A stretch of 64,000 nt of DNA, taken from Macrostomum lignano. Taxonomy: Eukaryota. The position numbers were made by a program, and so were the translations under genes. Location of the stretch: the NCBI GenBank assembly GCA_002269645.1, contig NIVC01001022.1, positions 310,001-374,000 on the forward strand, read 5' to 3'. Positions 9,437 to 41,975 of the stretch are shown in pieces; the first letter of the stretch is position 1; each line of letters opens with the position of its first letter. The notes under the pieces were generated by a model. That model worked only from the letters and a program-made list of their open reading frames with translations. It did not search any database and was not told the DNA's origin.

Positions 9437-9482
<46 letters not shown>

Positions 9483-10854: not shown

Positions 10855-10921
<67 letters not shown>

Positions 10922-11098: not shown

Positions 11099-11716
11099 TA
11101 TATACGATTATCTATCAATCTATTTTCATGTTTCTTTATTCACATTAGATTTTGCTCATCCCATTGTCTTTACGGATTCAACAGTCAGCAGGAGCGATTA
11201 AAACTGACAGTTATGATCAGCTTAACGGGACTCTGCGTGACGCAAATAATGGTGAAGGTCTTTGCGTACACAATTACATGTATATATGAGTATTTATTAT
11301 GTAAATCATATAATAACTACAAATGTCTACTATTGCTGTAGACGTGCTTATAGCTGGAAAAGCCAAGCTGCTGATAAAGTTGTCCCGGCCTCTGTGTCCG
11401 GTCACGTGATCTCGCTTTATAGATAAATGAAGCCACTCAAATGACAAAGAAAGAAAAATTATAATAGTAAAAATATTTCAGACATTCAAGTGTTTGGCCT
11501 AATAATGAGATTACTTTGCGAGATTTATAAAAGCGCTAGTTAGAACAGATGTTTTTTAATCAAAGAAATAAACTATCGGTGGGGTGGCTGGCTCGTGCTT
11601 GCTTTGACTACACATTGGCACAATTGGCTTTGTTTCATTATTGGTACTGAAATATAGTCTGTTGCTGGTACGGGTCTGGGTGTATTAGGACAGCTGAGCA
11701 GCGGATAGTCAATACA

Positions 11717-17489: not shown

Positions 17490-18290
17490 GGACCGACAGA
17501 CACAGACACTAGGACAGACACAGACACTAAGACAGACACAGACACTAAGACAGACACAGACACTAGGACAGACACAGACACTAAGACAGACACAGACACT
17601 AAGACAGACACAGACACTAGGACAGACACAGACACTAAGACAGACACAGACACTAGGACAGACACAGACACTAGGACAGACACAGACACTAAGACAGACA
17701 CAGACATTAAGGCAGACACAGACATTAAGGCAGACACAGACACTCAAGCAGACGCAGACACTGAGACAGACACAGGCATTAAGGCAGACACAGACACTCA
17801 AGCAGACGCAGACACTGAGACAGACACAGGCATTAAGGCAGACACAGACACTCAAGCAGACACGGACACTAAGACAGACTCTAAGACAGATACAGACAAT
17901 AGGACAGACACAGACACTAAGGCAGACACAGACACTCAAGCAGACGCAGACACTGAGACAGACACAGGCACTCAAGCAGACGCAGACACTGAGACAGACA
18001 CAGGCATTAAGGCAGACACAGACACTCAAGCAGACGCAGACACTGAGACAAACACAGGCATTAAGGCAGACACAGACACTCAAGCAGACAAGGACACTAA
18101 GACAGACTCCAAGACAGGCACAGACACTAAGAGACACAGAAATGAAGGCAGACACATAGACACTAAGACAGACGCAGACATTAAGGCAGGCACATCGACA
18201 CCCAGACAGACAGAGACACTAAGACGGAAAGAGGCATTAAGGCAGACACAGACACTAAGACAGACACAGGCATTAAGGCAGACACAGACG
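17490..18290. repeat. 18-bp minisatellite (GACACAGACACTAAGACA)
   Basis: Tandem array related to (GACA)n. Confidence 0.92.
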
Positions 18291-18738
18291 AAGACATACA
18301 CTAATACAGCCAAACTAATAACTATTGTGAATTTAAGATTCATTTTAAACCCTACAAAACTAATGTAAGCAGTTCGCCCTCTGACAAAAATCTGTGCCCA
18401 TCCAGTGCATCTCCTTTGCGGAGCTTCTATGCACACACACACGGGTTAGTGAGTAAGCAAACTCGCTAGTAGTAAGAGATAGAAATAGAAAAAGCTGCGC
18501 ATATTCTTTCTTAGAATCGATCCGCGAGTTGTCCAGATTAGAGAGGCAGGCTATAGCTGCTTGTGGGTGGAGAGAGTGAGAGCCTGTATAACTGGAGGAG
18601 TAAGGCCGTTATTGATCGGTTTCGCTACTCTTGCTACTAGCAGCAGTTCTGTGTTTTACTGAAATAATTCTAAAAAAACTGCCGAGTGTTTTAAGGGTAT
18701 GTTTGTTCGTTCGTTGTGGGACAAAGTCTTAGAATTTG

Positions 18739-19477: not shown

Positions 19478-19643
19478 GTTTGTTGTTTTGTTACCTAGTA
19501 AATTCTTAGCAAGATGTGTTTAATAATTTTCTCAATTTTCTTGATTTCCCAAAAATATTTATCATATTCAATTTTGTCGCCTAATTTCTTAGCGGGGGCT
19601 TTATATCTCTGAAAAGCAGCTTCTTTCAAAACTCCTTCACTTC

Positions 19644-20193
19644 GTATCTCCGACACTTCATATCTCCGACATTTCATATCTCCGACACTTCATATCTCTG
19701 ACAATTCATATCTCCGACATTTCATATCTCCGACACTTCATATCTCTGACAATTCATATCTCCGACATTTCATATCTCCGACATTTCATATCTCCGACAT
19801 TTCATATCTCCGACACTTCATATCTCTGACAATTCATATCTCCGACATTTCATATCTCCGACATTTCATATCTCCGACACTTCATATCTCTGACAATTCA
19901 TATCTCCGACACTTCATATCTCCGACATTTCATATCTCCGACATTTCATATCTCCGACACTTCATATCTCCGACACTTCATATCTCCGACATTTCATATC
20001 TCCGACATTTCATATCTCCGACACTTCATATCTCCGACACTTCATATCTCCGACACTTCATATCTCCGACATTTCATATCTCCGACACTTCATATCTCTG
20101 ACAATTCATATCTCCGACATTTCATATCTCCGACACTTCATATCTCTGACAATTCATATCTCCGACATTTCATCTCTCCGACACTTCATATCT
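19644..20193. repeat. 16-bp minisatellite (CATATCTCCGACATTT/CACTT)
   Basis: About 34 tandem copies. Confidence 0.95.
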
Positions 20194-20283
20194 TTAGAAA
20201 CCATAATAATAAAAAGCAAATCGCACTACTGATTTTTCAAACTAAACAAGTAGTATAAACTTTGTTCTTGAACACGCGCGCAG

Positions 20284-22272: not shown

Positions 22273-22352
22273 GTGAGTATATTGGTCTTTGTTTGGGGCT
22301 TAATGCGCTTTAATCGGTTCTTGATGCTTTAGGATTCGATTTTCGATTCGCT

Positions 22353-22610
22353 GTGAAAATCGCCCTGAATCTCATGAGAATCGCCTTGAATCCTATATGA
22401 GAATCGCCTTGAATCCTATATGAGAATCACCCTGAATCTCATATGAGAATCACCCTGAATCTCATGAGCATCACCCTGAATCTCATATGAGAATCGCTCT
22501 GAATCTCATATGAGAATCGCCCTGAAACTCATATAAGAATCGCCCTGAATCTCATATGAGAATCGCCCTGAATCTAATATGAGAATCGCCCTGAATCCCA
22601 TATGAGAATC
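22353..22610. repeat. Second array of the same 23-bp family (GAGAATCGCCCTGAATCTCATAT)
   Basis: Same unit in the next intron. Confidence 0.9.
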
Positions 22611-23129
22611 TTTTAAAAAACTTGTAGATATGAGAGTTGCACAGTGAATAATCTAATTAAAAAAGCTTCTCTTATTAATAAAGTATCAAATTCACATTCT
22701 TTACAAATTTGCGCTTATATTTATGTGGTGTACGTAATCAGGTCAATGCAAAGAAATAATATCAATATCTGTATTTCTTTGTGACTTATTACTTTTTTAA
22801 TTAAACTACTGTAAGAAGAAATTCAGCTCTCAGTTATTAGCTGTTAACCTCCTTCGCTCTCTCTCACACACTTTCTGGATGAAATCGACAGAGTAGGTGT
22901 CAAGTTAAATTAACATTCCTAATTTGGAATATCTTACGCAATTAGTGCAATGGCTCCTTACCCGTGTAGAATTCTTGCACAAAGTACAATTTTGGCTAGG
23001 AGGACCTTTTTCCTCGCTTATGACACAGATCTCAAATATGAAGTACGATATAACTTAAAATATCGATTAAGAATTGTATTGTAGTGCTTTTTCTTCTTGC
23101 ATACATGTACTTTAACTAAAAGAGCACAT

Positions 23130-23195
23130 AGAAGTTGGACAGACAGACAGGCAGGCAGGAAGGCAGACAGACAGACAGACAGATACTAATTAGGC

Positions 23196-23226
<31 letters not shown>

Positions 23227-23261
23227 GGCAGACAGACAGATAGACAGACAGGCAGACAGAC

Positions 23262-23306
<45 letters not shown>

Positions 23307-23433
23307 CTAAGACAGACAGACAGACACTTAGACAGACAGACAGACACTAAGACAGACAGACAGACACTTAGACAGGCAGGCAGACACTAAGACAGACAGA
23401 CAGACACTTAGACAGGCAGGCAGACAGACAGGC

Positions 23434-23496
<63 letters not shown>

Positions 23497-23560
23497 GACT
23501 AAGACAGACAGACAGACACTAAGACAGACAGACAGACACTAAGACAGACAGACAGACACT

Positions 23561-23646
<86 letters not shown>

Positions 23647-23677
23647 GGCAGACAGACAGGCAGACAGACAGGCAGGC

Positions 23678-23722
<45 letters not shown>

Positions 23723-23780
23723 GGCAGACAGACAGACAGGCAGACAGACAGGCAGACAGACAGGCAGGCAGACACTATAA
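23130..23780. repeat. (GACA)n microsatellite
   Basis: Direct reading. Confidence 0.95.
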
Positions 23781-24315
23781 GGCAGTCCAAACAGACGGAG
23801 GGTCAGTGACTAAGTCACGTAGACACAAAAGATAGACAGACCACAAACACTGATAGACAAGAGTGGCTGATAGAGACAAACATCTGAATCTATTAGTCTC
23901 AGTTCTTAGTAGTGGCTAGTATCAATAATTCCCATTGCAAAAGTTTCTGCTGTGTTTTCTGTCCCGAGTACAAATAAAACGCTGGATTTAACTAGCAGCT
24001 ATTGTACTTTCACGCAGGTGTATCTCTAGAAGCTAATTTGACACGTTTCAATCTGTTTTGTTTGCACGACACTGATTATTATAAGGCTGGAACACGAGAG
24101 CGTTCGAGTCAATGCGGCAGGATCTGCTAACTGCCTGTTTATAAAGCTTATATGCGTCACATGTGGAAAGCTGATATCAACAGGCTTGTGTAGCTGCTGC
24201 TGAGAAGCTCTGATTGTATCAATCAGTTTTTTTGCATCATATTTCTCCAACAAGCTAGCTTTGTTACAATGGCTTTAAAGAGAAAAAAGTATCAATGAAT
24301 CGATAAATTCTCCTC

Positions 24316-25935
24316 GAGAATCGCCTTAAAGTCGCTATGAGAATCACCCTGAAATGCTATGAGAATCTCTCCAAAGTCGCTGTGAGAATCACCCAGAAAT
24401 TTTTACGAGAATCTCTCCAACGTCGCTATGAAAATCACTCTGAAATGCTATGAGAATCTCTCCAAAGTCGCTGTGAGAGTCACCCTGAAATGTTATGAGA
24501 ATCTCTCCAAAGTCGCTGTGAGAGTCACCCTGAAATGTCATGAGAATCTCTCCAAAGTCGCTGTGAGAGTCACCCTGAAATGTTATGAGAATCTCTCCAA
24601 AGTCGCTGTGAGAGTCACCCTGAAATGTCATGAGAATCTCTCCAAAGTCGCTGTGAGAGTCACCCTGAAATGTCATGAGAATCTCTCCAAAGTCGCTGTG
24701 AGAGTCACTCTGAAATGCTATGAGAATCTCTCCAAAGTCGCTGTGAGAGTCACCCTGAAATGTCATGAAAATCTCTCCAAAGTCGCTGTGAGAGTCACCC
24801 TGAAATGTCATGAAAATCTCTCCAAAGTCGCTGTGAGAGTCACCCTGAAATGCTATGAGAATCTCTCCAAAGTCGCTGTGAGAGTCACCCTGAAATGTCA
24901 TGAAAATCTCTCCAAAGTCGCTGTGAGAGTCACCCTGAAATGTCATGAAAATCTCTCCAAAGTCGCTGTGAGAGTCACCCTGAAATGTTATGAGAATCTC
25001 TCCAAAGTCGCTGTGAGAGTCACCCTGAAATGTCATGAGAATCTCTCCAAAGTCGCTGTGAGAGTCACCCTGAAATGTCATGAAAATCTCTCCAAAGTCG
25101 CTGTGAGAGTCACCCTGAAATGTCATGAAAATCTCTCCAAAGTCGCTGTGAGAAGAATCACCTGAAATGCTATGAGAATCACCCTGAAATGCTATGAGAA
25201 TCTCTCCAAAGTCGCTGTGAGAGTCACCCTGAAAGGTAATGAGAAACACTCCAAATTCACTGTGAGAATCACCCTGAAATATCATGAGAATCTTTCAAAA
25301 GTCGCTGTGAGAATCACCCTGAAATGCTATGAGAATCTCTCCAAGGTCGCTGTGAGAATCACCCTGAAATTTTAACGAGAATCTCTCCAAAGTCGCTATA
25401 AGAATCACCCTGAAATGCTATGAGAATCACCCTGAAATGCTATGAGAATCTCTCCAAAGTCGCTGTGAGAATCACCCTGAAATGCTATGAGAATCTCTCC
25501 AAAGTCGCTGTGAGAATCACCCTCAAATTTTAACGAGAATCTCTCCAAAGTCGCTATAAGAATCACCCTGAAATGCTATGAGAATCACCCTGAAATGCTA
25601 TGAGAATCACCCTGAAATGCTATGAAAATCTCTCCAAAGTCGCTGTGAGAATCACCCTGAAATGCTATGAGAATCTCTCCAAGGTCGCTGTGAGAATCAC
25701 CCTGAAATTTTAACGAGAATCTCTCCAAAGTCGCTATAAGAATCACCCTGAAATGCTATGAGAATCACCCTGAAATACTATGAGAATCACCCTGAAATGC
25801 TATGAAAATCTCTCCAAAGTCGCTGTGAGAGTCACCCTGAAATGTCATTAGAATCTCTCCAAAGTCGCTGTGAGATTCACCCTGAAATTTTATGAGAATC
25901 TCTCCAAAGTCGCTGTGGGAATCACCCGGAAAATT
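24316..25935. repeat. 45-bp minisatellite (GAGAATCTCTCCAAAGTCGCTGTGAGAGTCACCCTGAAATGTCAT)
   Basis: Tandem array; the unit splits into 23+22 bp halves. Confidence 0.95.
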
Positions 25936-26369
25936 TCACGAGAATCACTTTAAAGCCGCTTTAAAATTCATTTAGAAACCACCTTGAAATGCTATAAAAA
26001 GGTCTCCATGTCGTTTTTTGGAGTCGTTATGAAAATCGTCACGATTTTTGGTAGATATGTGACGAATAAACTGCATTGCTTCGAATAATGTATTTAATTA
26101 GAAATTGGTATAAAAGCATGTATAATATTCGAATACAGCCACCCTGCTGAAAGAGGTTTGTCGGCACGATTTGATTCGTCCAATCACAGAGTTTCAAGTC
26201 TGACAGAACTCCTGTGCATAGATATACACTTAGCTCGCTTCTTTATTATTGGACCAAGGCTCAGCTGGCCTAGGTAATAAATCAGAAAGGTAAGCAAAGA
26301 AAATAACATATTTGCTGCGCGCAGAGCCTGTATTCTCCTTATCGATACTGTCGGTCTTGCTTGCACACC

Positions 26370-27015
26370 ATGACTGCCTACTGGCGAACTTTGAGTCAAG
26401 TCTATCGAGCCACTAAGGCATTCTCAACTATATCGCTAGGTTTGTTTTCTGATCAAAGCGACATCGGTGATGCAGAAACTGACGCCGATCAAAATGAGCA
26501 ATCCAATGACTCTACTACGGAGTCTTCATCTTCGAAGTGTAGCATCGGTAGAAGTAGAAGCTGTAGTTCCGCTGACTCGAATAACGCAACAAATGGCGCT
26601 TCATCAGCTCACATAGCTGCCGGCATAGCCGATTGGTTTTCTCGTCGTTGGGACGAATCTTCTGCTTCAAGCGTTGTTGGTATTGATAAAAACCCGCCGT
26701 CCGGGAAGCGTTTCCGCCGATCAGAATCGGAGACAAACGTACAGGCGGCTGGTAGGCATGCACCAGCATTCCAGATACCCAGCTTGCGGAATGCCAGACA
26801 GAGTGGCAGAATGTGCAGTCCCGACGAGAAATTGCGCCAACAACGAATGCATCTACGTCAGCAGAAGTTAATGCGTCAGGCTACTGACGCCACTAGCGCG
26901 GCAATTTTTGCGGCCTCATCTTGCTCAGAAGAATGTCGGCCTTGTTCGCGTAGGCCGTTTATTGATGATGAAGAAAAAAGTGCTGAATTTCCTATTGTTA
27001 ATGATGCGAACCGTG
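26370..27015 (+). CDS. Candidate alternative first exon of a shorter dystrophin isoform (unique ~215-aa N-terminus)
   Basis: ATG at 26370 in non-repetitive ORF 26361..27038 with upstream in-frame stop at 26304; G|GTGAGT donor at 27016 in phase 1, matching the phase-1 acceptor at 30287. Confidence 0.6.
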
Positions 27016-30000
27016 GTGAGTTCAAGGCGTGTCTTTAGCCACTATGATTTGCAAGATAGACTAAGTTCTACGAATTTTGTCAAGCCATATTTTGCAAGAA
27101 AAAAATCAGATCTTCATCTTTCATTACTCTTGGGATAAAACTAATATTCTAGTTTGGTTACTCGTTAGTAGTAGCTTTATATGCGTCAATATTTTTGAGG
27201 AAAAAGTTCTGCTGTCATTTTCTAAGTCGGATCGTTCTAGATCAGATGTGAGATTCTGCTGCTGTAACGAATTCCAATTACGTAGAGAAAGGTGTAAAAA
27301 TTATGTTCTATTAGTAAAAAATATTAATTAATATTGCTTGTTTTGCTCCCTGATAATTGATGGTTAAGCAAGGTCTTCTGTCACGAATCACGATATGTTA
27401 GTCTTTGTTATGCCCGGGTCGGTCCGAAGTTTTTTTTTAAAAGTTTTCAAGAGTTCTGCTTGCTGCATAGTACTCGTAGATGGGATGTAGCCAAGCGATG
27501 GTTCAAACAGTGAAGCCTATGCAATACAAGTGTAAGACTCTGTGTGACCAGTGTAAGCTGTGCAATCCCAGCGGTATGCAAGAAGTGATTAATAATAAGT
27601 GAACTGGAAGTGGGCTCTAGACGGGACTCCATGGGCCTCACGTTGTGGAAAGCAATTTCGTACACTTGACTGGCCTTCAACTTCAGAGATAGAGAGAAAG
27701 AGGGAGGGGAAGAACTTTTTTTCTCTTAAAAGCTTCCTTGCCTCACGGAACGTCGCAGTTATATTGGTGAGTTTGCCTCAGTGCCGATATGATCCTTGCA
27801 GCAGTCTGTATGGGATATTTCTTCTATCTTGCACACAAGGCGTTAAAGATCGTCTTTAAGTTCGTGACATGATCCTCGGGGGCCCAAATAAATATCTGGC
27901 CCGGTTGGCGCATGCATGCTGGTCCAAGCGTCGCCTCTGCTGCATGAATATTTAATAACTTACTTGACGGGGTTGTGGCCAGCTGCTTTGACCCTCGTCA
28001 AATTATTTGTAGAGTTTTAGGCCTCATATTTTACACCTTTTCGGAGTTGTAGTTCCGTATTTAAAGCAGGCCGTCATGCTCTGTTGTGCCCTGTGATTGT
28101 TTCCATTTTTCATCTTCATTCTCGGGCCTCTTGCCCACACACGGTGGATAGTCTGTTCTGCAGTTGTAATTGTTTCCTTATGCCAACGTTCTTATTTCAT
28201 TGATGATAAAAAATCCTGGGTCCTTTCGTATTTGGCGGCTGTCACGTTTCTGTTTCCTTTTAATAACAGGTCATTGCTGTTTATTAATTTGATTAGCTTT
28301 TCTGTCTTGCGTCTCTTGTTTCATTTCGCAAAAAATCTCTATAAAATCTGGAATTCTAGAATTGAAATAGACAACCGGAGTTGAACCAAATCGGATCGAC
28401 CAAAAGAAGAAGTAACAAAGAAGGTCTTAAGAGCTTTTTCCCGTGTCAAAAGTCCCCGTCTTGACTTATTTTTTTGTCTTGACTTCACAGCTGACAGGAT
28501 GAGGTGATGTTATGGCATTTGAAAGGCGAGAGAAAAAAGTCGCTCTCTAAGGCGGCTCAGGGTGGACTTCTGAAGGATTCAACTTTCTCTGATTCCAATT
28601 TTTTTAACATCCCTCTCTTCTATATGCTGTGTTTTTTCGTTTCTCAAGTCCCCCTCTTGAGTTAGAAGACAGAGCGAGAGAATTTGGAAAATATAAAGCT
28701 GGCTGGCTAGGTTTTATCATCTCTCTCACTGTTCCTCTCTTTTCCTTCGCTGCCGCCAGAGCAGAGATGCGTTGTGGAAACTACGAAAGGATGGGGGTGG
28801 CAGGGGGTTGATGGAGCTTAAGGGTTTTTCCTATCCCCCCTCAGCCTCTTTTTGCTCGTTTTTCTTCTCATGCGCATAGACGGTGTTAGAAAAAAATGGG
28901 AGGAGAGGGTGCTCTGGTTTAACCCCCATCCTCGGCGATGGAAAGGAAGGCATCGAAGAAAGGAAAGGGAGAGGGAGGGAGAAGGGGAAGACGGCGACAG
29001 GACTGGCTGGGGAAGAGCATGATGCTGATGCCGACGCTACTGGCTGCTTCAGGAGAAGCGCGGTGTTTGTGCGGTTGGAGATGAGTGAGGCGCGAGATAG
29101 ACAGGGAAATAGAGAGAGAGAGAGATAGAGAGAGGAGACGGACCCCAGGTACAAGATCGGCGGAAAGGCTTGCGCACAAGACTTAAACTCAGTAAAAAAA
29201 GCCTTATGAATAACTTAAATATAATTAAGTCTCTTCAACAAAATTTAAATAGAAAAAAATGTAGTCCAAACTCGCGCCTGCTAAAAATTGGCTTGTTGGT
29301 CTTTTTTTAGTTTCGCATTATTCAACAAAAAAATGCGAATTTGTGCGACCAGTTGTGCGATAAACGTTTCTAAGACATTGTTTTTGACCTTGGTGAGTTT
29401 TTCATTCCTCGCGTAAATTCTTGGCATCTTTGCTTGATTCGGGTATTTTGAGCTTGCCAAAAGAAACATTAGAAGACTTTTATTATCTGTCTATGAAAAT
29501 TATCTAGTGTCGTCGATATGTATCGAAAGCTTAGTCGCGCTGGACAAAAACACGCCCTTATAGTATCTTGCAAAAAATAAGAAAGCATAATAAAAGTGAG
29601 ATCATAGATAAGAAACTGCCATGCGTGGGAAGCTGCATGCGGAGGCGGATTTCGTTTTGCGAAGCAGGAAATAAAATTTAATCAACTCGTCGCATCTTTC
29701 TCCTGACGCCGAGCTTTCCGCGAGCTTACTACTCCCCGCCCCCTCGCTCACTGGATCGGTCTATAGCGCTCTCCATTACTCTCTCGATCCCCATTGGGAA
29801 TAGAGTAAAGACACACGGACCAGGACAGAATGGCAATCCGGTTGGTATTCTCTTCTGGAGCTATCTGTCTCATATTTCACTAGAGCTTGAGGTGTAGCAG
29901 TTGGTCTGTAGCTAGGGAGGAGATAGAGAATTAAGTAATTGAGTTTGGTTGTTGGATTCACTTGACCAGTTTTGCTGGTCTATAGCTTATCTACTACTGC

Positions 30001-30146
30001 TCTCTGTAGTTCCAATTCTGTTTAATAATTTCTGTTCCAAATGCAGCTACACTTGTTAATTGGCTCACGGAATCTTGAAATTAAGCATCGGGAATGCGCT
30101 TGAAAATAACTTCAATATAGAAGCGCGCTAATACTGTACGCAGGCA

Positions 30147-30190
30147 TGTACACTCTCTGCGCCGTCAGGGGGTTGGCCTTCATGGGTGTA
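30147..30190 (-). mobile_element. SINE family 1, short diverged fragment
   Basis: GGCATGTACACTCTCTGCGCCGTCAGGGGGTTGGCC resembles GGCATGTACACTTCACTGCGCCTTGGGGGGTTGGCT at ~5094-5128. Confidence 0.45.
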
Positions 30191-30286
30191 AATCTCAGGA
30201 CAACCCACCGGCCGCGCATGCCCTCTAAACTACTACTACTCAGTACAGTAGTGTGATTCAGTCCTATCACTCTGCCAATCCTACAG

Positions 30287-30936
30287 TCTCCAGCGTAGTG
30301 TCCAGCTGGGAGGCGGCGGAGTCGGGTCTGCACCAGCGGCGCATTGCCATGGAAGAGACCGCCATCGAGCTCCGGCAATGGGAGCAGAACTGCCAGCACC
30401 TGGAGTCGCTGCTGGAGTGCCTGTCGCCGGATTCAGCAACTGGACTGGACGATCTGGACAGCCAGCTGGGTGCCGCCATCGACTCAGGTGCCCAGCTGTG
30501 CGTCAAGCATTCGAAAGAGAACACGGAACCGATGCGGGAGCGTCTGGACCGGCTTAGGCAGGCCCGACTGCGTCTGGCGGAGCGGAAGCGTCAGCAGCAG
30601 CAGCAGCCGAAGCTGCCACCGAAGCCTCCGCCTCATCGCCGGCCCGACGCGCCGCCAACTCCGCCGGTTCGTCAGTCGTCTCGGGAGCGAGTTGTCGGCG
30701 GCGGCACCGCTCAGCCGCCAATCTCCATGGAAGCGATCGGCAGGCTGGATAAGTCCGAGGCTCGACTCCGGCACTGGGAGGTCTCGCTACCGTTGACGCC
30801 GCTAAGGGAAGATTCACTGGCGACGTCTTCTAGCGGCGTTGCCGACGATGAAGAGAATGAAGATGCTGGCGCCGCCGCAGCTGATGAGCTGGCCGAATTA
30901 ACTGAGGAAGAGAGGCGGCTGGCCGGTCAGCTGAAG
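30287..30936 (+). CDS. DMD: Dystrophin exon (spectrin-like repeat plus Pro-rich linker)
   Basis: cctacag acceptor, phase 1; VSSVVSSWEAAESGLHQRRIAMEETAIELRQWEQNCQHLESLL; AAG|GTGAGA donor, phase 0. Confidence 0.85.
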
Positions 30937-30989
30937 GTGAGACATTTTGTACCTGTGCTGTAGTGCTGCTCTATTGTTCTTTTTGATAC

Positions 30990-31006
30990 TACTACTGCTA
31001 CTACTA

Positions 31007-31092
<86 letters not shown>

Positions 31093-31132
31093 AGTACTAG
31101 TACTAATACTAATACTACTACTATTACTACTG

Positions 31133-31204
<72 letters not shown>

Positions 31205-31205
31205 G
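30990..31205. repeat. (ACT)n microsatellite
   Basis: Fills most of intron 30937..31229. Confidence 0.97.
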
Positions 31206-31229
31206 TACACCCACTACTCTATCTCACAG

Positions 31230-31512
31230 GACTTCGACTCTGAATGCGAGTTGGCCACCGCCGAGCTGCAGCTGCTGGCCGCCCATCATCAGCACCAGCA
31301 GCCGGTGTGCAACCGGGCCGCCAGCCTGCTGCACCGGTGGACCCAGCTGGCCCAGCAGCGCGCCACGCCGCTCCGTCAGGATCTTCGCCGGCGTCAGCAC
31401 AGTAGGCGGAGTCGGCGAAGCCAGTCGCAGGCGCTGCAAGTTCGAGTCAAGTCGCTGGTGGACTGGCTGGCCACGGCGGAGGCTGCGTTGCGGCAGCAGC
31501 AGCTCCTGCTTG
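31230..31512 (+). CDS. DMD: Dystrophin exon (end of R22-like, start of R23-like repeat)
   Basis: ctcacag acceptor, phase 0; VKSLVDWLATAEAALRQQQLLLG resembles human R23 LQELLVWLQLKDDELSRQAPIG; G|GTGAGA donor, phase 1. Confidence 0.88.
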
Positions 31513-31524
31513 GTGAGATTTTAG

Positions 31525-32182
31525 ACTGGGGATCTGAGAGTTGGGGAATCTCACCTTGGGGATCTGAGAGTTGAAGGATCTCAACTTGACAATCTGAAAA
31601 TCGGGGATCTCAGCTTGGGGGGTCAGAGAATCGGAGATCTCAGCTTTGGGGATCAGAGAATCGGGGATCTCAGCTTGGGGATCAGTTAATTGGAAATGAA
31701 TGAATCGGGGATCTCAGCTTGGGGACCAGAGAATCGGGGATCTCAGCTTGGGGGATCATAGAATCGGGGATCTCAGCTTGGGGCGTCAGAGAATCGGAGA
31801 TCTCAGCTTTGGGGATCAGAGAATCGGGGATCTCAGCTTGGGGGATCATAGAATCGGGGATCTCAGCTTGGGGACCAGAGAATCGGGGATCTCAGCTTGG
31901 GGAATCATAGAATCGGGGATCTCAGCTTGGGGCGTCAGAGAATCGGAGATCTCAGCTTTGGGGATCAGAGAATCGGGGATCTCAGCTTGGGGACCAGTTA
32001 ATTGGGAATGATTGAATCGGGGATCTCAGCTTGGGGACCAGAGAATCGGGATTTCAGCTTGGGGATCAGCGAATCGGGGATCTCAGCTTGGGGATCAGTT
32101 AATTGGGAATGAATGAATCGGGGATCTCAGCTTGGGGATCAGTTAATTGGGAATGAATGAATCGGGGATCTCAGCTTGGGAT
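31525..32182. repeat. ~29-30 bp minisatellite (GAATCGGGGATCTCAGCTTGGGGATCAGA)
   Basis: Fills nearly all of intron 31513..32213. Confidence 0.93.
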
Positions 32183-32213
32183 CGAACTCAATTAAAACTC
32201 CCCACTTCTCCAG

Positions 32214-32813
32214 GCGGCGACGCCGAGTCAGTTCGATCCGAGCAGACACCCGAGCTCGAACGCCTCGCCAGCGAACTTCGCTCCCGACGTCCTGAGCTCG
32301 ATTCCGTCCTAGCTGACGCCGAGCAGCAGCAGCAGACTGGCTTCCTTGACAACCGGCTCAACCGGTCCATCGGCCAGCTCGATCGCCGATTCCGCGAGCT
32401 CGAATCGCGAATCGACTCGCACTCGGAGTCGCTCCGGCTCGCCCTGCACGGCCTGGCAGCTCTGGAGGACACGGCGGCTCAGGCAGAGTCGGCCGCTGCA
32501 GCGGCCCAACGCGAAGTGGCGGCCTGGTCCTCTGTGGACTCGCTGACCCCAGCCCAGTGCGCCTCAGAGCCCGCCAGGCTGCAGGAGTTCCTGAGCGGCA
32601 CCCTGGAGCCCCTGACCCGCCTGTCAGCCAGTCTGGAGCGTCAGTCTCAGCAACTGTCAGAGGCTCGAGTGGTTCTCAATCACGATTTAGCCAGCAGATT
32701 AAACTATATTAGACAGCAGGTTATGAGCATGCGATCGGCTATTGAACATCGGTGCGGTCTGTTGGCTAATCTTCGAGAGCAACAGCAACAACAACAACAA
32801 CAACAACAACAGC

Positions 32814-32850
<37 letters not shown>

Positions 32851-33501
32851 GCAAAGACAGTCTTTAGTTCCCAATGTCATGACTGCATCCTACGCTTCCA
32901 TGACAGGCTCTGTGCATTCTGTACAACAGCAACAGCAACAGCAGCATCAACAGACAGCTCATCCAGCCGTATCTAACAGCGTCCGACCTCCTTGGCAACG
33001 AATGCTTCATCCTAACGGTAGTCAGCTTCCCTATTATCGCAATGCCGACACCCGAGAAACCAGCTGGGATCATCCGATCATGGCCGAGCTGATGCAGAGC
33101 CTCACGGAGCTGAACTATATCCGGTATGCGGCTTACCGGACCGCCGCTAAGCTACGCAGACTACAGCGGGCCCTGTACTTGGATCTGGTGTCGCTAGGCT
33201 CCGCCGCTGAGGTGTTCAGAGATCACGGCATTGGCACCGCGGCTGCCGGAGATCGACTCATTGACGTGTCCCAGATGACCAGCTGTCTAGCTGGCCTGTT
33301 TGCCAGATGTCGCACACGCGGTGGCGGAGGCGGCAGCAGCGGCAGTAGTGCTGATGCCGGCCTACAAGCCCAGACTATCGACCTGAGCTTGAATTGGCTG
33401 CTCAACGTCTACGATCACGTGAGAAGCGGTAGACTCCGTGTGCTCAGCTTCAAAGTTGGCCTGGTGCTGCTCTGCGCTGCTGGGTTAGAAGACAAATATC
33501 G
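32214..33501 (+). CDS. DMD: Dystrophin exon: R23/R24-like repeats, polyQ, WW domain, EF-hand region 1
   Basis: PWQRMLHPNGSQLPYYRNADTRETSWDHP (WW); YIRYAAYRTAAKLRRLQRALYLDL and LNWLLNVYDHVRSGRLRVLSFKVGLVLLCAAGLEDKYR are diagnostic dystrophin/utrophin motifs; acceptor phase 1, CG|GTGAGC donor phase 2. Confidence 0.97.
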
Positions 33502-33639
33502 GTGAGCGATGTGGCTGCTTGTGTTTTCTGATATTTATTGTGGTCAGTTGTAGCTTATTGACAATCTCAATCACGGCTTGGCCAACTCCGGCCCGCGAAG
33601 CCTCTATCCTGTCATCGGGTCCTTTGAAACTCTCTTCTT

Positions 33640-34045
33640 ACCTCTCCATCTCCCCTCTCCTCTTTCCTCTCCTCTCTCCCCTCTCCTCTCTCCCCTCTCC
33701 TCTCTCCCATCTCCCATCTCCCATCTCCCATCTCTCCTATCTCACATCTCTCCCCTCTCCCCTCTCCTCTCTCCCATCTCCCATCTCCCATCTCCCATCT
33801 CTCCCCTCTCGCCTCTCCTCTCTCCCCTCTCCCCTCTCCTCTCTCCCATCTCCCCTCTCCTCTCTCCCCTCTCCTCTCTCCCATCTCCCATCTCTCCTCT
33901 CTCCCCTCTCCTCTCCCCTCTCCCCTCTCCTCTCTCCCATCTCCCCTCTCCTCTCTCCCCTCTCCCCTCCCCTCTCTCATCTCTTCCATCTCCCCTCTCT
34001 CCTCTCCCTCCCCTTCTCTCCTATCTCTTCCCTCTTCTGTTCCCT
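33640..34045. repeat. CT-rich low-complexity tract (CTCTCC/CTCCC)
   Basis: Direct reading. Confidence 0.9.
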
Positions 34046-34274
34046 CTCCTGTCCACTCTCATCTGGCCAGCGGCTATGAGCTGTGGGTTCTCTATTAGTT
34101 TTTTAAGGTAATTTTGTTTCTGTTTACCTTATTATTTTTTCAATATTCTTATAATATTGTGTGTACAATATTGTATCGTAGACATGCTTTCCTAGAAAAA
34201 TAAGGAACTCGATTTGAGGGAAGAACTTTTCGTGTCATTTCATTCACTGTCCCCTCCCCAACCGCCGTGCCCAG

Positions 34275-34434
34275 CTACCTGTTCTCTGCTGTGGTGGACG
34301 AGCGGGGTGCCCTGGACCAGCGCCGACTAGGGCTACTGCTGCACGACTGCATGCAAGTGCCGAGACACCTGGGCGAAGCCGCCAGTTTCGGTGGCAGTAA
34401 TATTGAGCCATCAGTGAGATCCTGCTTTGATAAG
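34275..34434 (+). CDS. DMD: Dystrophin exon: EF-hand region 2
   Basis: [53 protein letters not shown] closely matches the dystrophin motif; cccag acceptor, AAG|GTGAGT donor. Confidence 0.97.
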
Positions 34435-35339
34435 GTGAGTAAATATCAATATATAGAGAATTTTAATTATGCCTGTTGCTTGCTTTTTGGAAAAAAATTC
34501 CTGGAAGTTTTCTTCTGAGATTATTAATTATTTATTTATTGACAGTTGATATTTTTCTATTCTAGATCATTCCAGAGTTTCTAAAGCAACCTTGTAGTGC
34601 CCCCCTCTGTTTTCGTTGTTTTTTTTTTTTGATTTTCGCAACGTACTTCATATTATTAATAGTAGAATTTATTAACGAAAATGCTATAAAAAACAACGTC
34701 AGGCCTCTGGCCAAGCCCCGACCGGACTGTCCCGAGCCGACAGTCGGCGCTATCGCCGTATGCCGCGCGATTTGCATCGCCAATTGGCTAATGAGCTGCG
34801 CGCGATTGTTGATAATGATTTTGATGCCGAATCGCAGGTCAGTCTGAGGTCTTTTGTCACTAATACATGTAAACCGCGTTTTTAATAGATTTGCGGCTTG
34901 CATTGTACTACTTATATCGCTTTTACTAGTAGTATTGCTGTAGTATACTAGTTTAATATCAGAGAAATACAAACGAATCTTAAGTAGTTTTAATTCATTG
35001 TTAACATTTAAATTCAAATAAATTCGTTTTTGTTTGTTTGAAGTTGATTTTTTGTTTAATTTTTTACTCAAAATAGTTTTTTCTCCATATGTTTTGCTGT
35101 GATTGTTAAATCGATTATAACTTTGATTTATAGAATGTCTTGATTCTAGATTCCTAATATACATACATGTATGTGCATAAAGTCATTATCTTCGATCAGT
35201 TTTAGTGTGCTAACTAATTGAAGCCAATTCTAATTAATAGTTTTTTTCGCAAGTTGGATTAATCAGGTTAATATTGCTTAAAGTTTATGCTCTTATTTTT
35301 ACATACACCGGTACTACCGATTTTAAAATCTCTGTCCCA

Positions 35340-36068
35340 CCTCAAAACGCTGCCCAGGACTTCTATTACCCCGTTCTCTCTGCCCCACCCACCCCAAAAC
35401 TTGTTGAATAACCCTGCCCGGGACTTTTATTGCCCCGTTTTCTCCGCCCCACCCACCCCAACACTCGTTGAATAACCCTGCCCGGGACTTTTATTGCCCC
35501 GTTCTCTCCGCCCCACCCAACCCAAGACTCGTTGAATAACCCTGCCCGGGACTTTTATTGCCCCGTTCTCTCTGCCCCACCCAACCCAAGACTCGTTGAA
35601 TAACCCTGCCCGGGACTTTTATTGCCCCGTTCTCTCTGCCCCACCCAACCCAAGACTCGTTGAATAACCCTGCCCGGGACTTTTATTGCCCCGTTTTCTC
35701 CGCCCCACCGACCCCAACACTCGTTGAATAACCCTGCCCGGGACTTTTATTGCCCCGTTTTCTCCGCCCCACCCACCCCAACACTCGTTGAATAACCCTG
35801 CCCGGGACTTTTATTGCCCCTTTCTCTCCGCCCCACTCAACCCAACACTCGTTGAATAACCCTGCCCAGGACTTTTATTGCCCCGTTCTCTCTGCCCCAC
35901 CCGGCACCCACCCCAACACTCGTTGAATAACCCTGCCCAGGACTTTTATTGCCCCTTTCTCTCCGCCCCACTCAACCCAACACTCGTTGAATAACCCTGC
36001 CCAGGACTTTTATTGCCCCGTTCTCTCTGCCCCACCCGGCACCCACCCCAACACTCGTTGAATAACCC
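35340..36068. repeat. 64-bp minisatellite, about 11 copies
   Basis: Unit ACTCGTTGAATAACCCTGCCCGGGACTTTTATTGCCCCGTTCTCTCCGCCCCACCCAACCCAAG; period 64 (35463 to 35527). Confidence 0.93.
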
Positions 36069-36152
36069 TCCCTGCCGTCTATGCCAGACCGAAAATTGAC
36101 TTATTTATGCCAGAAATTTTATCTATGCCAATATACTTATCTAAACCAACAG

Positions 36153-36952
36153 ACACAGAGCAGTGGAATCCGACTGTCGCACTTCTTGGCATGGCTTCGC
36201 CTCGAGCCCCAGTCAATAGTTTGGCTACCTGTGCTACACCGGCTCACCTGCTCGGAGCACTCTCTCCACCAGGCCCGCTGCTCATCCTGCAAAGCGATGC
36301 CAATGCGCGGCCTTCGCTACAAGTGCCTGAAATGCTTCAATCTCAACCTGTGTCAGCAATGCTTCTTCTCCGGTCGATCGGCCCGGCATCACAAAGTGAC
36401 TCATCCGATGCAGGAGTACGTCCGACCGCCTGGCAGCGGCGACGGTATTCGCAGTTTGAGTCGGACTCTTAGAAACAAGCTGCGAATCGGCGGCGGCAGC
36501 GGAGGCCACGGCGGCGGCGGCGGCTTCAGCAGCGACCTGGGCGACGGCGGAGGCGGCGGCGCTACCGGCGGCGGCGGGTCCCGCGGCGGCTCGCCGGCCA
36601 AGCTGGGCTACCTGCCCGTCCAGACAGTCCGCGAAGGCCAGGCCATCGAGTCGCCGGCCGGGTCGCCGGCGCACACGTCCAGCCGGGACATGCACAACCG
36701 AGTGGAGGCCTATGCTTCCAGGCTAGCTGAAGTCGAGCAGCAGCAGCAGCAACGGCAGGACAGTCAGAAGATGCCGAAACAGCCGCCCCCGCCTCCGGCT
36801 TCGCCTCTGCCTCATAAAACTGCCACTACTACTAATAGTAGTGCTACTAATACTACTCAACCGCTGCAGCACTCGTTCCCAGCTGATGCGGCCGCCGCCG
36901 ATCGACCGAGTCCTCAGCAGCAGAAATTTGCGTCTACAAGTTTAGTGAACAG
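36153..36952 (+). CDS. DMD: Dystrophin exon: ZZ zinc finger and first syntrophin-binding segment
   Basis: WLRLEPQSIVWLPVLHRL; CSSCKAMPMRGLRYKCLKCFNLNLCQQCFFSG (ZZ); LGYLPVQTV; DMHNRVEAYASRLAEVE; ccaacag acceptor, AG|GTAATT donor. Confidence 0.97.
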
Positions 36953-37330
36953 GTAATTAATCAATCTACGAGATCAGTTCTTCAGAGTCGTTGCAGGTAG
37001 CAGATAAATTATTAGGAAAGAAGCGACTCAATCCGACTCTGAAACGACCGATATGTCACGGTACGATACAAGTTCCCAAAATGTCGTCAAAGAGTCGCCT
37101 AAGGAGAGTCAATTTGAGGTATTCTATTGTCTGCGACTCTGAAACAAAATGACTCTGAAATGAATTAGAATCGCATTTCGCATATATCACGGTAAGGCTT
37201 TCAATAGGTGTCTGTCGCTGTGATTTTGCAGCAGCAATGCCCAAAGCCCCAATTTTGCTGTCTAAACGTCAGCTCTGCATCCTAAATTTAATCAGTTGAC
37301 ATTCATTTGTTCTTCTCTTTACATTTTCAG

Positions 37331-37568
37331 TGACGATGAGCACGCATTGATTGCGGCCTTCGCTGGCACGCTGCGTCAGCGGCAGAACGCCGCTGCGACC
37401 ACCGTCAGTGCTGCCGCCGCAGCCGCCGTTGCCTCCTCGTCCCCGATGCTTCCGCAGAGCCCGCAGCCGTATTTACCGCACCAGCAGCAGCAGCAGCAGC
37501 ACTTCTCATTGCCGCCGGACAGAACCGAGCAGATGAAGGAGCTGGAGGCTGAGAATAAACGTCTACAA
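37331..37568 (+). CDS. DMD: Dystrophin exon: second syntrophin-binding segment and coiled coil H1
   Basis: SDDEHALIAAFAGTL (human IDDEHLLIQHYCQSL) and ELEAENKRLQ; attttcag acceptor, CAA|GTGAGC donor. Confidence 0.93.
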
Positions 37569-37576
37569 GTGAGCTG

Positions 37577-38395
<819 letters not shown>

Positions 38396-38674
38396 AGCGA
38401 CAACAGTGACGACCGAAGCAGTCCTTGCTTTTCGCAGTCCTCGAACGCACCCAAATGAAAGTAAAATCGTATAAGCATAGTCGCCTTAACCCAATCTCTT
38501 CCCTCGAGTGACGTTTATACCTACCATAAAATTTAGCTGGTTTTGTGTTTTCCACGAAGAGTCCAAAAAGGACTGGCCTGTTGTGCTACAATTAACTGGC
38601 TAGCTTTTCTCTGTCCAGTCAGTTTCTATATATAAATATATATATAGTACAACTGGCTAGCATATTTCTGGGCA

Positions 38675-38748
38675 CCCCAATAGCTCAGCGGTCTGACGCA
38701 TGCTGACTGCGCCGCGCTAGACCGGGGTTCGAATCTTGAGCCGTCCTA
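38675..38748 (+). pseudogene. Degenerate tRNA-like sequence or SINE head
   Basis: A-box-like TAGCTCAGCGG (38681) and B-box-like GGTTCGAATC (38726) but no complete cloverleaf. Confidence 0.45.
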
Positions 38749-38800
38749 GCCGCGAGTGCATAATTAAAAAAATCAATCGGGGTTGCCCAATGCTCTAAAA

Positions 38801-38882
38801 GTCAGCATGGCCGAGTGGTTAAGGCGTCGGACTTAAAATCCTATGGGGTTTCCCTGCGCGGGTTCGAACCCCGCTGCTGACG
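38801..38882 (+). tRNA. Class II tRNA with serine-type body and TAA (Leu) anticodon; possibly a pseudogene or variant allele
   Basis: 82-nt cloverleaf: acceptor GTCAGCA/TGCTGAC, T-arm GCGGG-TTCGAAC-CCCGC, variable arm TGGGGTTTCCCTGC, loop CT-TAA-AA (anticodon 38834-38836), discriminator G; one C-T mismatch in the anticodon stem; T7 run at 38902-38908. Confidence 0.85.
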
Positions 38883-38982
38883 CGAAGAGAGAAAGAGAAT
38901 ATTTTTTTAATTTTAACTACTTTCATTAGTTTAGTTAGCGTTTTATCACTATTTTTCTATCTTTCTTATCAATCCACAACAG

Positions 38983-39822
38983 GCAGAATACGAGCGATTG
39001 AAAAGCGACACCTCAGCACAGAGACAGCGACAACAGCAGCATCTGCAGGTGGCTTCACCGCTGACTCCCGTTCGCTCCCTGGCCGCCGCAGCTCCTCCGC
39101 CCCCAGCAACGGCAGCTGCGGCAGCGGCAGCAGCCGAGGCGCGGCTACTGCGAGCTCACAAAGGCCGGCTGGAGGCGCGAATGGCCCTGCTGGAAGATCA
39201 CAACCGGCAGTTGGAGGGCCAGCTGTCCAGACTCCGCAGACTGCTTGCTCAGTCCAGTCAGAGTCCTTCTCCATCGCCCCAGCATCACACCATGCTGCAT
39301 CAGTATCAGCAGCCGCAGCCGCAGTCATCTCTAGCTCAGACTCTGCCCACCGGTGGCCGGCCTCAGCATCCGCATCATCAGCGAGCCGGCAGTTCCGGTT
39401 GCGTGTCGGATTCAGAGTCGACTTTGCCGCCTAATCAGCTGCAGCACTTCCTGCCGCCTGGTCAGCAGTTGCGACAGCAGCACCACCTGCCTTACCATCA
39501 GCAGCAGCCGCCGCCGCAGCATCAGCAGCTGTCAGCGTCTGCCACTCCGTCCAGCGTGTTTCTTCGTCACGGCGGCGGCTCCAGCAGATTCGCTGGCGCC
39601 GGCGGCAGCGAGAGCGACAGCGCCAGCCTGTACGGCAGCCTGACCAGGAATGGCGGCCTGGCTGACTCATGCCCGACCTCGGTTGGCAGGAACTCGGTGA
39701 GCTCGCTGTTTGCCATGGCCGGTCAGGTGAGCAGCGCCATGGGTCAGCTGGTTGACGTGATGAACCGCGACTCGGCCTCTGGCTCTGGCGCACCTGCTGG
39801 TGGCGGCATTGATCAAAACTGA
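38983..39822 (+). CDS. DMD: Dystrophin last coding exon: coiled coil H2 and C-terminal helix
   Basis: AEYERLK; [37 protein letters not shown]; C-terminal [21 protein letters not shown]; stop TGA 39820-39822. Confidence 0.96.
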
Positions 39823-41838: not shown

Positions 41839-41975
41839 CTAAAGACACGGACTGCAGTCCCGTCAAATTAAAATTCCTGCTTACGCCACTGGTCCTCCAT
41901 GCTAGATGTACACAACATAAGTAGAAGTTTATGGTAATGAAACTTAAAAAATCAAATCAATATGTGTACGTAAGA

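What the first reader, a model, noticed from the sequence alone, without database searches (positions are those of the whole stretch)
26370..27015. Large hidden alternative first exon predicting a ~1630-aa short dystrophin isoform with a novel N-terminus
Seen: inside the 8-kb intron 22273..30286 is a non-repetitive ORF with ATG at 26370, an upstream in-frame stop, and a consensus G|GTGAGT donor in phase 1, the phase required by the acceptor at 30287. The main chain splices correctly without it. Splicing it on gives 4905 nt (1634 aa + stop): about 215 unique residues (S/D/E-rich, with KRFRRSESE and LRQQRMHLRQQKLMRQ segments), the last spectrin repeats and the whole WW-EF-ZZ-CT region. Established: vertebrates (Dp260/140/116/71) and Drosophila (Dp186, with a long unique N-terminus) make short dystrophins from intronic promoters. 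Inference: an analogous and possibly independently evolved internal-promoter isoform.
Basis: partly seen in the sequence, partly recalled or inferred. Interest (0 to 1): 0.7.

Follow-up and report, generated by a model that had tools for sequence, protein, structure and literature searches.

The report
Candidate internal first exon of flatworm dystrophin
An 8-kb intron of the dystrophin gene of the flatworm Macrostomum lignano holds a 646-base protein-coding-looking stretch that could start a shortened dystrophin, as internal promoters do in flies and vertebrates, but no transcript or related sequence could be checked here to show it is used.

Summary
There is a non-repetitive open frame at 26307-27035, with ATG at 26370 and an in-frame TAA at 26304-26306. 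A G|GTGAGT donor at 27015|27016 is in phase 1, which matches the shared acceptor at 30287. Joining them gives exactly 4905 nt (1634 aa) containing WW, EF-hand and ZZ domains.

The window comes from Macrostomum lignano assembly Mlig_3_7. Sequence-only tests favour a real coding exon:
- Three-base periodicity is far above that of chance open frames and lies within the range of verified exons.
- The compositional signal starts near the ATG and ends at the donor.
- The 249 nt upstream contain no ATG.
- The start context is ACCATGA.
- Elsewhere in non-repetitive DNA of the window, long open frames ending at a GTRAG donor are verified exons or the unidentified 58-60.6 kb ORF cluster.

Three points count against it or leave it open. 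Third-position GC (0.41) equals intron GC, whereas every verified coding sequence here has 0.58-0.78. No homologue was found, although a genuine neighbouring exon used as a control also found none. No separate gene record for a short isoform overlaps the 3' end of the dystrophin gene.

Transcript evidence could not be reached. Best reading, at about 0.5: an alternative first exon giving a Dp186-like short dystrophin, possibly evolutionarily young. It would be a new member of a known kind and is of moderate interest.

The parts
26109..26114 (+). TATAAA motif about 260 nt upstream of the ATG. A CCAAT lies at 26180-26184. Candidate core-promoter elements; inference only.
   Evidence: Motif scan. 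The last upstream ATG (26118) lies just after this TATAAA.
26121..26369 (+). Putative 5' leader: 249 nt without any ATG. It contains the in-frame TAA at 26304-26306 and a possible acceptor gcgcag|AG at 26324|26325.
   Evidence: No ATG where 3.8 are expected, Poisson P=0.023. Only 2% of ATGs in the neighbouring non-repetitive intron are preceded by such a gap. Acceptor list.
26370..27015 (+). Candidate alternative first coding exon: 215 codons plus 1 nt, phase 1, with start context ACCATGA.
   Evidence: ORF. Periodicity chi2 is 34.4 against a null mean of about 8. Autocorrelation peaks at lags that are multiples of 3, with no repeat. The composition shift coincides with the ATG and the donor. 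GC at codon positions 1/2/3 is 0.50/0.56/0.41.
27016..27021 (+). GTGAGT donor, 21 nt before the ORF's own stop (TAG 27036-27038).
   Evidence: It matches the species' donor motif GT[G/A]AG (PMC8629364) and 6 of the 7 donors in my exon model.
22273..30286 (+). Host intron of the full-length dystrophin chain (8014 nt), between donor 22272 and acceptor 30287, both phase 1. About 2.5 kb of it is tandem repeats.
30287..39822 (+). Seven shared downstream exons (30287-30936, 31230-31512, 32214-33501, 34275-34434, 36153-36952, 37331-37568, 38983-39822). They encode spectrin-like repeats, WW, EF-hand_2/3, ZZ and the C-terminal coiled-coil region.
   Evidence: Model. Pfam hits. The annotated gene ends at the same stop, 39822.

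Best explanation
The segment 26370-27015 is an alternative first coding exon of the Macrostomum lignano dystrophin gene.

Proposed mechanism:
- Transcription starts inside the 8-kb intron, probably between about 26120 and 26370. Less likely, a spliced leader is added there.
- Translation starts at the ATG at 26370.
- The GTGAGT donor at 27015 joins the acceptor at 30287 that the full-length mRNA also uses.

The product would be a 1634-aa protein. It lacks the actin-binding head and most of the rod. It keeps about four spectrin-like repeats plus the WW, EF-hand, ZZ and C-terminal regions that bind dystroglycan and its partners in characterised dystrophins. Its unique N-terminus is 215 residues, hydrophilic, rich in Ser, Ala, Arg and Asp, and probably mostly disordered.

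Shown here: the sequence anatomy, the frame compatibility and the intrinsic coding signal.

Inferred: the promoter, actual use of the splice junction, translation and any function.

Third codon positions sit at intron composition and no homologue was found. Both suggest a lineage-restricted, possibly young exon.
For: - The frame, the ATG, the upstream stop, the donor and the phase are all verified, and the full model is 4905 nt without a stop.
- The host is a dystrophin-family gene.
- Three-base periodicity chi2 is 34.4. The null for chance-open frames has a mean of 7.5-8.3 (P<=0.0003). Non-repetitive intron windows reach at most 20.3. Verified coding windows give 23-108.
- Nine of the ten strongest autocorrelation lags are multiples of 3, with no tandem repeat.
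- Low T at position 2 and high G at position 1 start at the ATG and stop at the donor.
- GC at positions 1 and 2 (0.50, 0.56) departs from the intron background, while GC at position 3 (0.41) equals it (0.39-0.45). That is the pattern expected of a coding sequence without codon bias.
- I tested 744 combinations of GTRAG site and phase in the window. Upstream open frames of 200 codons or more occur in verified exons, tandem-repeat arrays, the unidentified ORF cluster at 58-60.6 kb, and here.
- The 249-nt leader has no ATG, P about 0.02, and the start context is ACCATGA.
- The donor matches the species motif GT[G/A]AG.
- There is precedent. Vertebrate Dp260/140/116/71 arise from internal promoters. 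Drosophila Dp186/205/117 have unique N-termini and 4, 2 and 0 spectrin repeats (PMC2840664). Sea urchin has SuDp98 (PMC1790709).
Against: - No transcript, 5'-end or junction evidence was accessible.
- The codon-usage log-likelihood is -0.007 bits per codon, against +0.24 to +0.45 for every verified coding segment. It is no better than other frames of the same DNA.
- GC3 of 0.41 is below the lowest 215-codon window of verified coding sequence, 0.49.
- The periodicity is concentrated in 26400-26680. The 3' third of the ORF is weak, with chi2 of 5-10 per 72 codons.
- There is no homologue among the proteins, none among 1.84 billion representatives, no Pfam family and no PDB match. The control exon shows that this absence carries little weight.
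- Only one gene record, of 4076 aa, overlaps the gene's 3' end in the deposited annotation, which was built from RNA-seq.
- GGTGAGT also occurs at 27766 and 29392 in the same intron without an ORF.
Confidence: 0.5

Rival explanations
1. It is a chance open frame in intronic DNA that happens to end near a cryptic GTGAGT. It is not expressed as protein.
For: Open frames of at least 243 codons arise in about 3% of simulated 64-kb windows, so hundreds are expected across the genome. Codon usage is indistinguishable from non-coding DNA, and GC3 equals intron GC. GGTGAGT occurs three times in this intron. No homologue was found.
Against: Periodicity is far above that of chance-open frames (P<=0.0003), with multiples-of-3 autocorrelation and no repeat. 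The composition shift is bounded by the ATG and the donor. The leader is ATG-free, the start context is good, and strand and phase are correct. In non-repetitive DNA of the window, the other donor-terminated frames this long are verified exons or the unidentified 58-60.6 kb ORF cluster.
Confidence: 0.17
2. It is a separate gene nested in the intron. The ORF would either be translated to its own stop at 27036-27038, giving 222 aa, or be spliced from 27015 to exons other than 30287.
For: The ORF has its own ATG and its own stop. M. lignano has dense, often trans-spliced transcription units (PMC5730564). The composition differs from the host gene.
Against: No gene with the 222-aa or 225-aa product is on record in the annotated assembly. 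The first AATAAA after the stop is at 27887, about 850 nt downstream. No other coding-like block lies between 27016 and 30286 on this strand. The strong donor sits 21 nt before the stop and is in phase with the dystrophin acceptor.
Confidence: 0.1
3. It is an internal alternative (cassette) exon of the full-length transcript, entered from donor 22272 through an acceptor inside the open frame. The best candidate is 26929-27015, 87 nt and 29 codons. The long upstream ORF would then be incidental.
For: Thirteen AG sites are phase-compatible. The one at 26929 (tgcggcctcatcttgctcag|AAGA) has a pyrimidine fraction of 0.71 and a CAG, like verified acceptors. Any such exon keeps the main frame.
Against: The coding-type signal is strongest upstream of 26929, at 26400-26680. 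A mini-exon does not explain the 243-codon frame, the ATG context or the ATG-free leader.
Confidence: 0.1
4. It is a decaying relic: a former first exon or captured coding fragment that is no longer used.
For: Third positions sit at intron equilibrium and the coding signal is weak in the 3' third. No separate gene record for a short isoform overlaps the gene's 3' end.
Against: The frame, the ATG and the donor are all intact. A disused 729-nt frame would soon acquire stops.
Confidence: 0.08

Closest known systems
Drosophila Dp186 (also Dp205 and Dp117), short dystrophins made from internal promoters
   Same: The first exon lies in an intron of the long gene. The unique N-terminal domain is not shared with the long isoforms. 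The actin-binding domain is lost. A few spectrin repeats are kept (Dp186 has 4; about 4 here), together with the WW, ZZ and coiled-coil regions (PMC2840664).
   Different: The fly isoforms are proven by cDNA, mutants and expression, and their N-termini are conserved among Drosophila species. Here nothing is proven beyond sequence anatomy. The 215-aa segment has no detectable similarity to anything.
Vertebrate Dp260, Dp140, Dp116 and Dp71; G-utrophin; sea urchin SuDp98
   Same: N-terminally truncated products from promoters inside introns, spliced onto common exons. The Dp116/G-utrophin/DRP2/SuDp98/Dp205 intron is argued to hold an ancient promoter (PMC1790709).
   Different: From my own knowledge, vertebrate unique N-termini are very short (none to roughly a dozen residues), against 215 here. 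Whether the host intron is orthologous was not tested. Also from memory, human intron 55 is phase 0, whereas this intron is phase 1.
Spliced-leader trans-spliced gene starts in M. lignano
   Same: An AG acceptor at 26324|26325 precedes the ATG. The species' spliced leader ends in ATG (PMC8629364), and that ATG would be in frame with the ORF if trans-spliced there (my reading).
   Different: The site reads GCGCAG, not the enriched [T/C]TNCAG motif, and its pyrimidine tract is weak at 0.53.

Membership tests
Dystrophin family (host gene) | WW domain, EF-hand_2 and EF-hand_3, and a ZZ zinc finger in that order, followed by a coiled-coil C-terminus | tested here: met
   Pfam gives EF-hand_2 at 9e-35, EF-hand_3 at 3e-16, ZZ at 1e-11 and WW at 2e-4 (WW is below the gathering score). 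One spectrin repeat at 4e-5. The best matches to the WW-EF-ZZ region are dystrophins and utrophins at up to 53% identity.
Internal-promoter short dystrophin isoform (Dp type) | A unique first exon inside an intron of the full-length gene, on the sense strand, with its own start codon | tested here: met
   Exon 26370-27015 lies inside intron 22273-30286 on the + strand. TAA at 26304-26306 precedes the ATG at 26370.
Internal-promoter short dystrophin isoform (Dp type) | In-frame splice from the unique exon onto the common downstream exons, keeping the Cys-rich and C-terminal regions and losing the actin-binding domain | tested here: inconclusive
   The sequence allows it: both sites are phase 1 and the ORF is 4905 nt without a stop. 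No junction reads could be examined.
Internal-promoter short dystrophin isoform (Dp type) | Transcription starts in the intron (5' RACE, CAGE or RAMPAGE evidence) | not testable with these tools
   Only motifs are available: TATAAA at 26109, CCAAT at 26180 and an ATG-free leader. RAMPAGE data exist publicly but cannot be reached here.
Internal-promoter short dystrophin isoform (Dp type) | The unique N-terminus is conserved in related species, as for the fly isoforms | tested here: inconclusive
   No hits. The genuine exon 30287-30936 also found none, and the conserved-region search listed only proteins under 600 aa and no close relative. The test therefore had no power.
Typical M. lignano coding sequence | GC-rich third codon positions and the codon preferences seen in verified exons of this locus | tested here: not met
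   GC3 is 0.41 against 0.58-0.78. The codon log-likelihood is -0.007 against +0.24 to +0.45 bits per codon.
Protein-coding DNA in general | Three-base compositional periodicity beyond what stop avoidance produces | tested here: met
   Chi2 is 34.4 with P<=0.0003. Autocorrelation peaks at lags that are multiples of 3.
Spliced-leader trans-spliced 5' end | [T/C]TNCAG acceptor at the start of the first exon | tested here: not met
   The only acceptor between the TAA and the ATG is GCGCAG|AG at 26324|26325, or AG|CC two bases later at 26326|26327.
Nested independent gene | Its own stop followed by a nearby polyadenylation signal, and an annotated product | tested here: inconclusive
   A stop is present at 27036-27038. 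The nearest AATAAA is at 27887. Neither the 222-aa nor the 225-aa product is on record.

The most novel reading that the evidence does not exclude
The 215-residue N-terminus is a lineage-specific coding exon born recently from intronic sequence. Third positions are still at intron composition, no homologue is found anywhere, and the product is mostly disordered. It has been recruited, with a new internal promoter, onto the ancient dystrophin C-terminal module. That would be an independent origin of a Dp186-like isoform in flatworms and a datable case of a new N-terminal domain arising de novo.
Probability: 0.15. Interest if true: 0.55.

Novelty: new member of a known kind. Interest (0 to 1): 0.35.

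Why it matters
Short dystrophins from internal promoters are well studied in vertebrates and Drosophila, and one is known from sea urchin. I found none described for flatworms or other lophotrochozoans.

A confirmed case in M. lignano would bear on an open question: whether such promoters are ancestral to bilaterians (PMC1790709 argues that one intron's promoter is ancient) or arise repeatedly. M. lignano is a transgenic, regenerating model animal.

It would also provide an isoform-specific handle, a unique 646-nt exon, for RNAi or reporter work on non-muscle dystrophin functions.

If the exon proves young, it would be a clean example of a new coding first exon added to a very old gene.

If it is not expressed, it is a caution. 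In a repeat-rich genome, long open frames with good splice sites occur by chance.

Tried and rejected
- Homology. The 215 aa found nothing in the search for homologous proteins, in the full HMMER scan of 1.84 billion representatives, in Pfam or in PDB sequences. I ran the genuine exon 30287-30936 as a control and it also found nothing. The WW-EF-ZZ search listed only proteins under 600 aa, none more than 53% identical. The negatives therefore do not count against the exon.
- Exact-product look-ups. The 222-aa ORF (from the ATG) and the 225-aa ORF (from the TTG) are not on record.
- Organism. The neighbouring GNT-I ORF matched exactly, which identified the source as GCA_002269645.1, contig NIVC01001022.1, M. 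lignano. A lectin ORF look-up found nothing.
- Transposon, duplicate or decayed repeat. Rejected: no repeats, no inverted or direct flanking repeats, and no second copy in the window.
- Donor as a by-product of a TGA stop. GTGAG contains TGA, and the GNT-I ORF end at 44019 is such a case. Rejected here, because the TGA inside GTGAGT is out of frame and the ORF stops at a TAG 21 nt later.
- Compressibility as a repeat measure was not discriminating at this length.
- Structure. A single-sequence AlphaFold model had mean pLDDT 54.8. Only helix 151-183 was confident, so I ran no fold search.
- Functional link with the downstream gene. The GNT-I ORF is closer to MGAT1 (1e-52) than to POMGNT1 (7e-21), so no dystroglycan-glycosylation link is suggested.
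- Sigma-70 promoter and terminator scans were not used, because the organism is a eukaryote.

Full report
**What is there**

Window positions 26307-27035 form a 243-codon open frame on the + strand. An in-frame TAA lies at 26304-26306 and the first ATG is at 26370, in the context CACACCATGA. A CGTG|GTGAGT donor ends the putative exon at 27015. The stretch 26370-27015 is 646 nt, which is 215 codons plus one base, so phase 1.

The full-length chain's donor, AAG|GTGAGT at 22272, is also phase 1. The acceptor cctacag|TCTC puts 30287 at codon position 2. Either upstream exon therefore supplies the G of a GTC (Val) codon.

I rebuilt the downstream exons independently from open frames and from GT/AG sites in compatible phases. 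The exons are 30287-30936, 31230-31512, 32214-33501, 34275-34434, 36153-36952, 37331-37568 and 38983-39822. An alternative acceptor six bases downstream, at 36159, would give 4899 nt.

Pfam finds EF-hand_2 (9e-35), EF-hand_3 (3e-16) and ZZ (1e-11) in these exons. WW is weaker, at 2e-4 and below the gathering score. One spectrin repeat scores 4e-5. The host is a dystrophin-family gene.

**Where it comes from**

The neighbouring 496-aa GNT-I ORF (42533-44023) matches exactly one record: GCA_002269645.1, contig NIVC01001022.1. The gene just upstream of it in that record ends at window 39822, which is my stop codon, and has a 4076-aa product. NIVC01 is the annotated Mlig_3_7 assembly of Macrostomum lignano (PMC5730564).

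The deposited annotation was built from RNA-seq together with trans-splicing and poly(A) evidence. Only one gene record overlaps the 3' end of the dystrophin gene. Only a gene's longest product is on record, so a short isoform would not be visible.

**Is it more than chance?**

Length alone is not strong evidence. I simulated 64-kb windows with a second-order Markov model trained on the local non-repetitive intron. An open frame of at least 243 codons, on either strand, appeared in about 3% of them. Many long ORFs in this window are products of tandem repeats.

This ORF is not repetitive. Tandem Repeats Finder reports nothing at score 30. There are no flanking or internal repeats and no other copy in the window.

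Several independent features add to the length:

- **Periodicity.** The chi-square for base composition by codon position is 34.4. Frames kept open only by stop avoidance give a mean of 7.5-8.3, with P<=0.0003. Non-repetitive intron windows have a median of 4.6 and a maximum of 20.3. Verified coding windows give 23-108.
- **Autocorrelation.** Nine of the ten strongest lags are multiples of three, with no single dominant period. GNT-I and a dystrophin exon behave the same way; introns do not.
- **Boundaries.** The shift to low T at position 2 and high G at position 1 begins near the ATG and ends at the donor.
- **Donor-terminated frames.** I tested all 744 combinations of GTRAG site and phase in the window. 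Upstream open frames of 200 codons or more occur in verified exons, tandem-repeat arrays, the unidentified ORF cluster at 58-60.6 kb, and at 27015.
- **Leader.** The 249 nt before the ATG contain no ATG, where 3.8 are expected (P about 0.02). The 220 nt before that contain six.
- **Donor type.** The donor is of the GT[G/A]AG type that dominates in this species (PMC8629364). Six of the seven donors in my exon model are of that type.

**What counts against it**

Codon usage is unlike every verified coding sequence in the window.

| Measure | Candidate exon | Verified coding sequence |
|---|---|---|
| GC at third positions | 0.41 | 0.58-0.78 |
| Lowest GC3 in any 215-codon window | n/a | 0.49 |
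| Codon log-likelihood (bits per codon) | -0.007 | +0.24 to +0.45 |

The candidate's log-likelihood is also no better than that of other frames of the same DNA.

I read this as follows. Positions 1 and 2 (GC 0.50 and 0.56) depart from the intron background of 0.39-0.45, while position 3 sits on it. That is what a coding sequence without codon bias looks like. The exon differs from the rest of the gene, which suggests low or restricted expression or a young age. This is inference.

The periodicity is also uneven. It is strong in the Ser/Asp-rich part at 26400-26680 and weak in the last third. GGTGAGT occurs twice more in this intron, at 27766 and 29392, without an ORF.

**Homology and structure**

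The 215 residues find nothing in the word-indexed protein collection, in a full HMMER scan of 1.84 billion representatives, in Pfam or in PDB sequences.

My control shows these negatives carry little weight. The genuine exon 30287-30936 also finds nothing. The conserved WW-EF-ZZ region retrieves only proteins under 600 aa, at 53% identity or less, with no close relative.

The segment is hydrophilic (GRAVY -0.82), with S 36, A 26, R 21, D 15 and E 12 of 215 residues. A single-sequence AlphaFold model is mostly low-confidence. One helix, residues 151-183, is confident at pLDDT about 90.

**Most likely mechanism**

An internal start in the intron produces an mRNA whose first exon carries an ATG-free leader and 646 nt of coding sequence. 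Candidate promoter elements are TATAAA at 26109 and CCAAT at 26180. The exon is spliced from 27015 to 30287.

The product is a 1634-aa dystrophin. It lacks the actin-binding head. It keeps about four spectrin-like repeats, of which one has Pfam support and the rest are inferred. It also keeps the dystroglycan-binding WW/EF/ZZ module and the C-terminal coiled coil. The architecture resembles Drosophila Dp186, which has a unique N-terminus and four repeats (PMC2840664).

A variant is spliced-leader addition at 26324|26325. The leader's terminal ATG would then be in frame with the ORF. However, the site reads GCGCAG rather than YTNCAG and has a weak pyrimidine tract.

**Rivals**

- **Chance ORF, about 0.17.** See the evidence above.
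- **Nested gene, about 0.10.** The ORF's own stop is at 27036-27038, but the first AATAAA is 850 nt downstream and neither ORF product is on record.
- **Cassette exon, about 0.10.** The best phase-compatible acceptor, at 26929, would give an 87-nt exon. It leaves the long frame, the ATG context and the leader unexplained.
- **Decaying relic, about 0.08.**

**Comparison with what is known, and verdict**

Internal-promoter short dystrophins are established in vertebrates and flies, and one is known from sea urchin. One promoter-bearing intron is argued to be ancient (PMC1790709). If real, this is a new member of a known kind.

I could not test whether the host intron is the orthologous one. I also could not test expression, which is the defining feature.

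Confidence in the alternative-first-exon reading is about 0.5. Interest is about 0.35.

The public RNA-seq, RAMPAGE and spliced-leader tracks for this assembly would settle the question in minutes.

Noticed in passing
window 58258-60651 (+), frame 1: Three long open frames (58258-58650, 58654-59775, 59779-60651; 131, 374 and 291 codons) lie in one frame, separated by single stop codons. They have no Pfam match and GC3 of only 0.38-0.47. The last is Thr/Pro-rich and mucin-like. This may be a pseudogene, a gene with assembly errors or a degenerate mobile element.
   Followed up: partly
window 27766-27772 and 29392-29398 (+): Two more exact GGTGAGT sites lie in the same 8-kb intron, making three including 27015, where about 0.4 are expected per strand. 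I saw no compatible long ORF upstream of either. They could be decoys, untranslated alternative exons or chance.
   Followed up: partly
window 26324-26327 (+): The M. lignano spliced leader ends in ATG (PMC8629364). If it were trans-spliced at gcgcag|AG (exon start 26325), that ATG would be in frame with the ORF and add 15 residues. The site does not match the YTNCAG motif.
   Followed up: partly
window 42533-44023 (+): A 496-aa single-ORF GNT-I family glycosyltransferase lies 2.7 kb downstream of dystrophin. It is closer to MGAT1 (PDB 1FO8, 1e-52) than to POMGNT1 (7e-21). Its stop codon is the TGA inside a GTGAGC, so a donor-like motif at an ORF end can arise as a by-product of the stop.
   Followed up: yes
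window 45428-46195 and 46789-47523 (+): A tandem pair of paralogous ORFs each carries a C-type lectin domain and a weak PAN-like match. GC3 is 0.67 and 0.78.
   Followed up: partly
window 3000-4500, 6700-10100, 10500-11300, 17450-18400, 19600-20250, 23138-23774, 24328-25932, 33550-34100, 35240-36060, 37570-38460, 40900-41900, 54900-55900: Extensive tandem and microsatellite arrays, such as (GACA)n and a 45-nt unit repeated 36 times, create many 100-500-codon open frames in several frames and on both strands. ORF length alone is misleading in this genome.
   Followed up: partly
window 32790-32880 (+, inside exon 32214-33501) and 36153-36159: A run of about 26 glutamine codons lies just upstream of the WW domain, inside the coding exon. 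Two AG acceptors six bases apart, at 36153 and 36159, would add or remove two residues (Thr-Gln).
   Followed up: no
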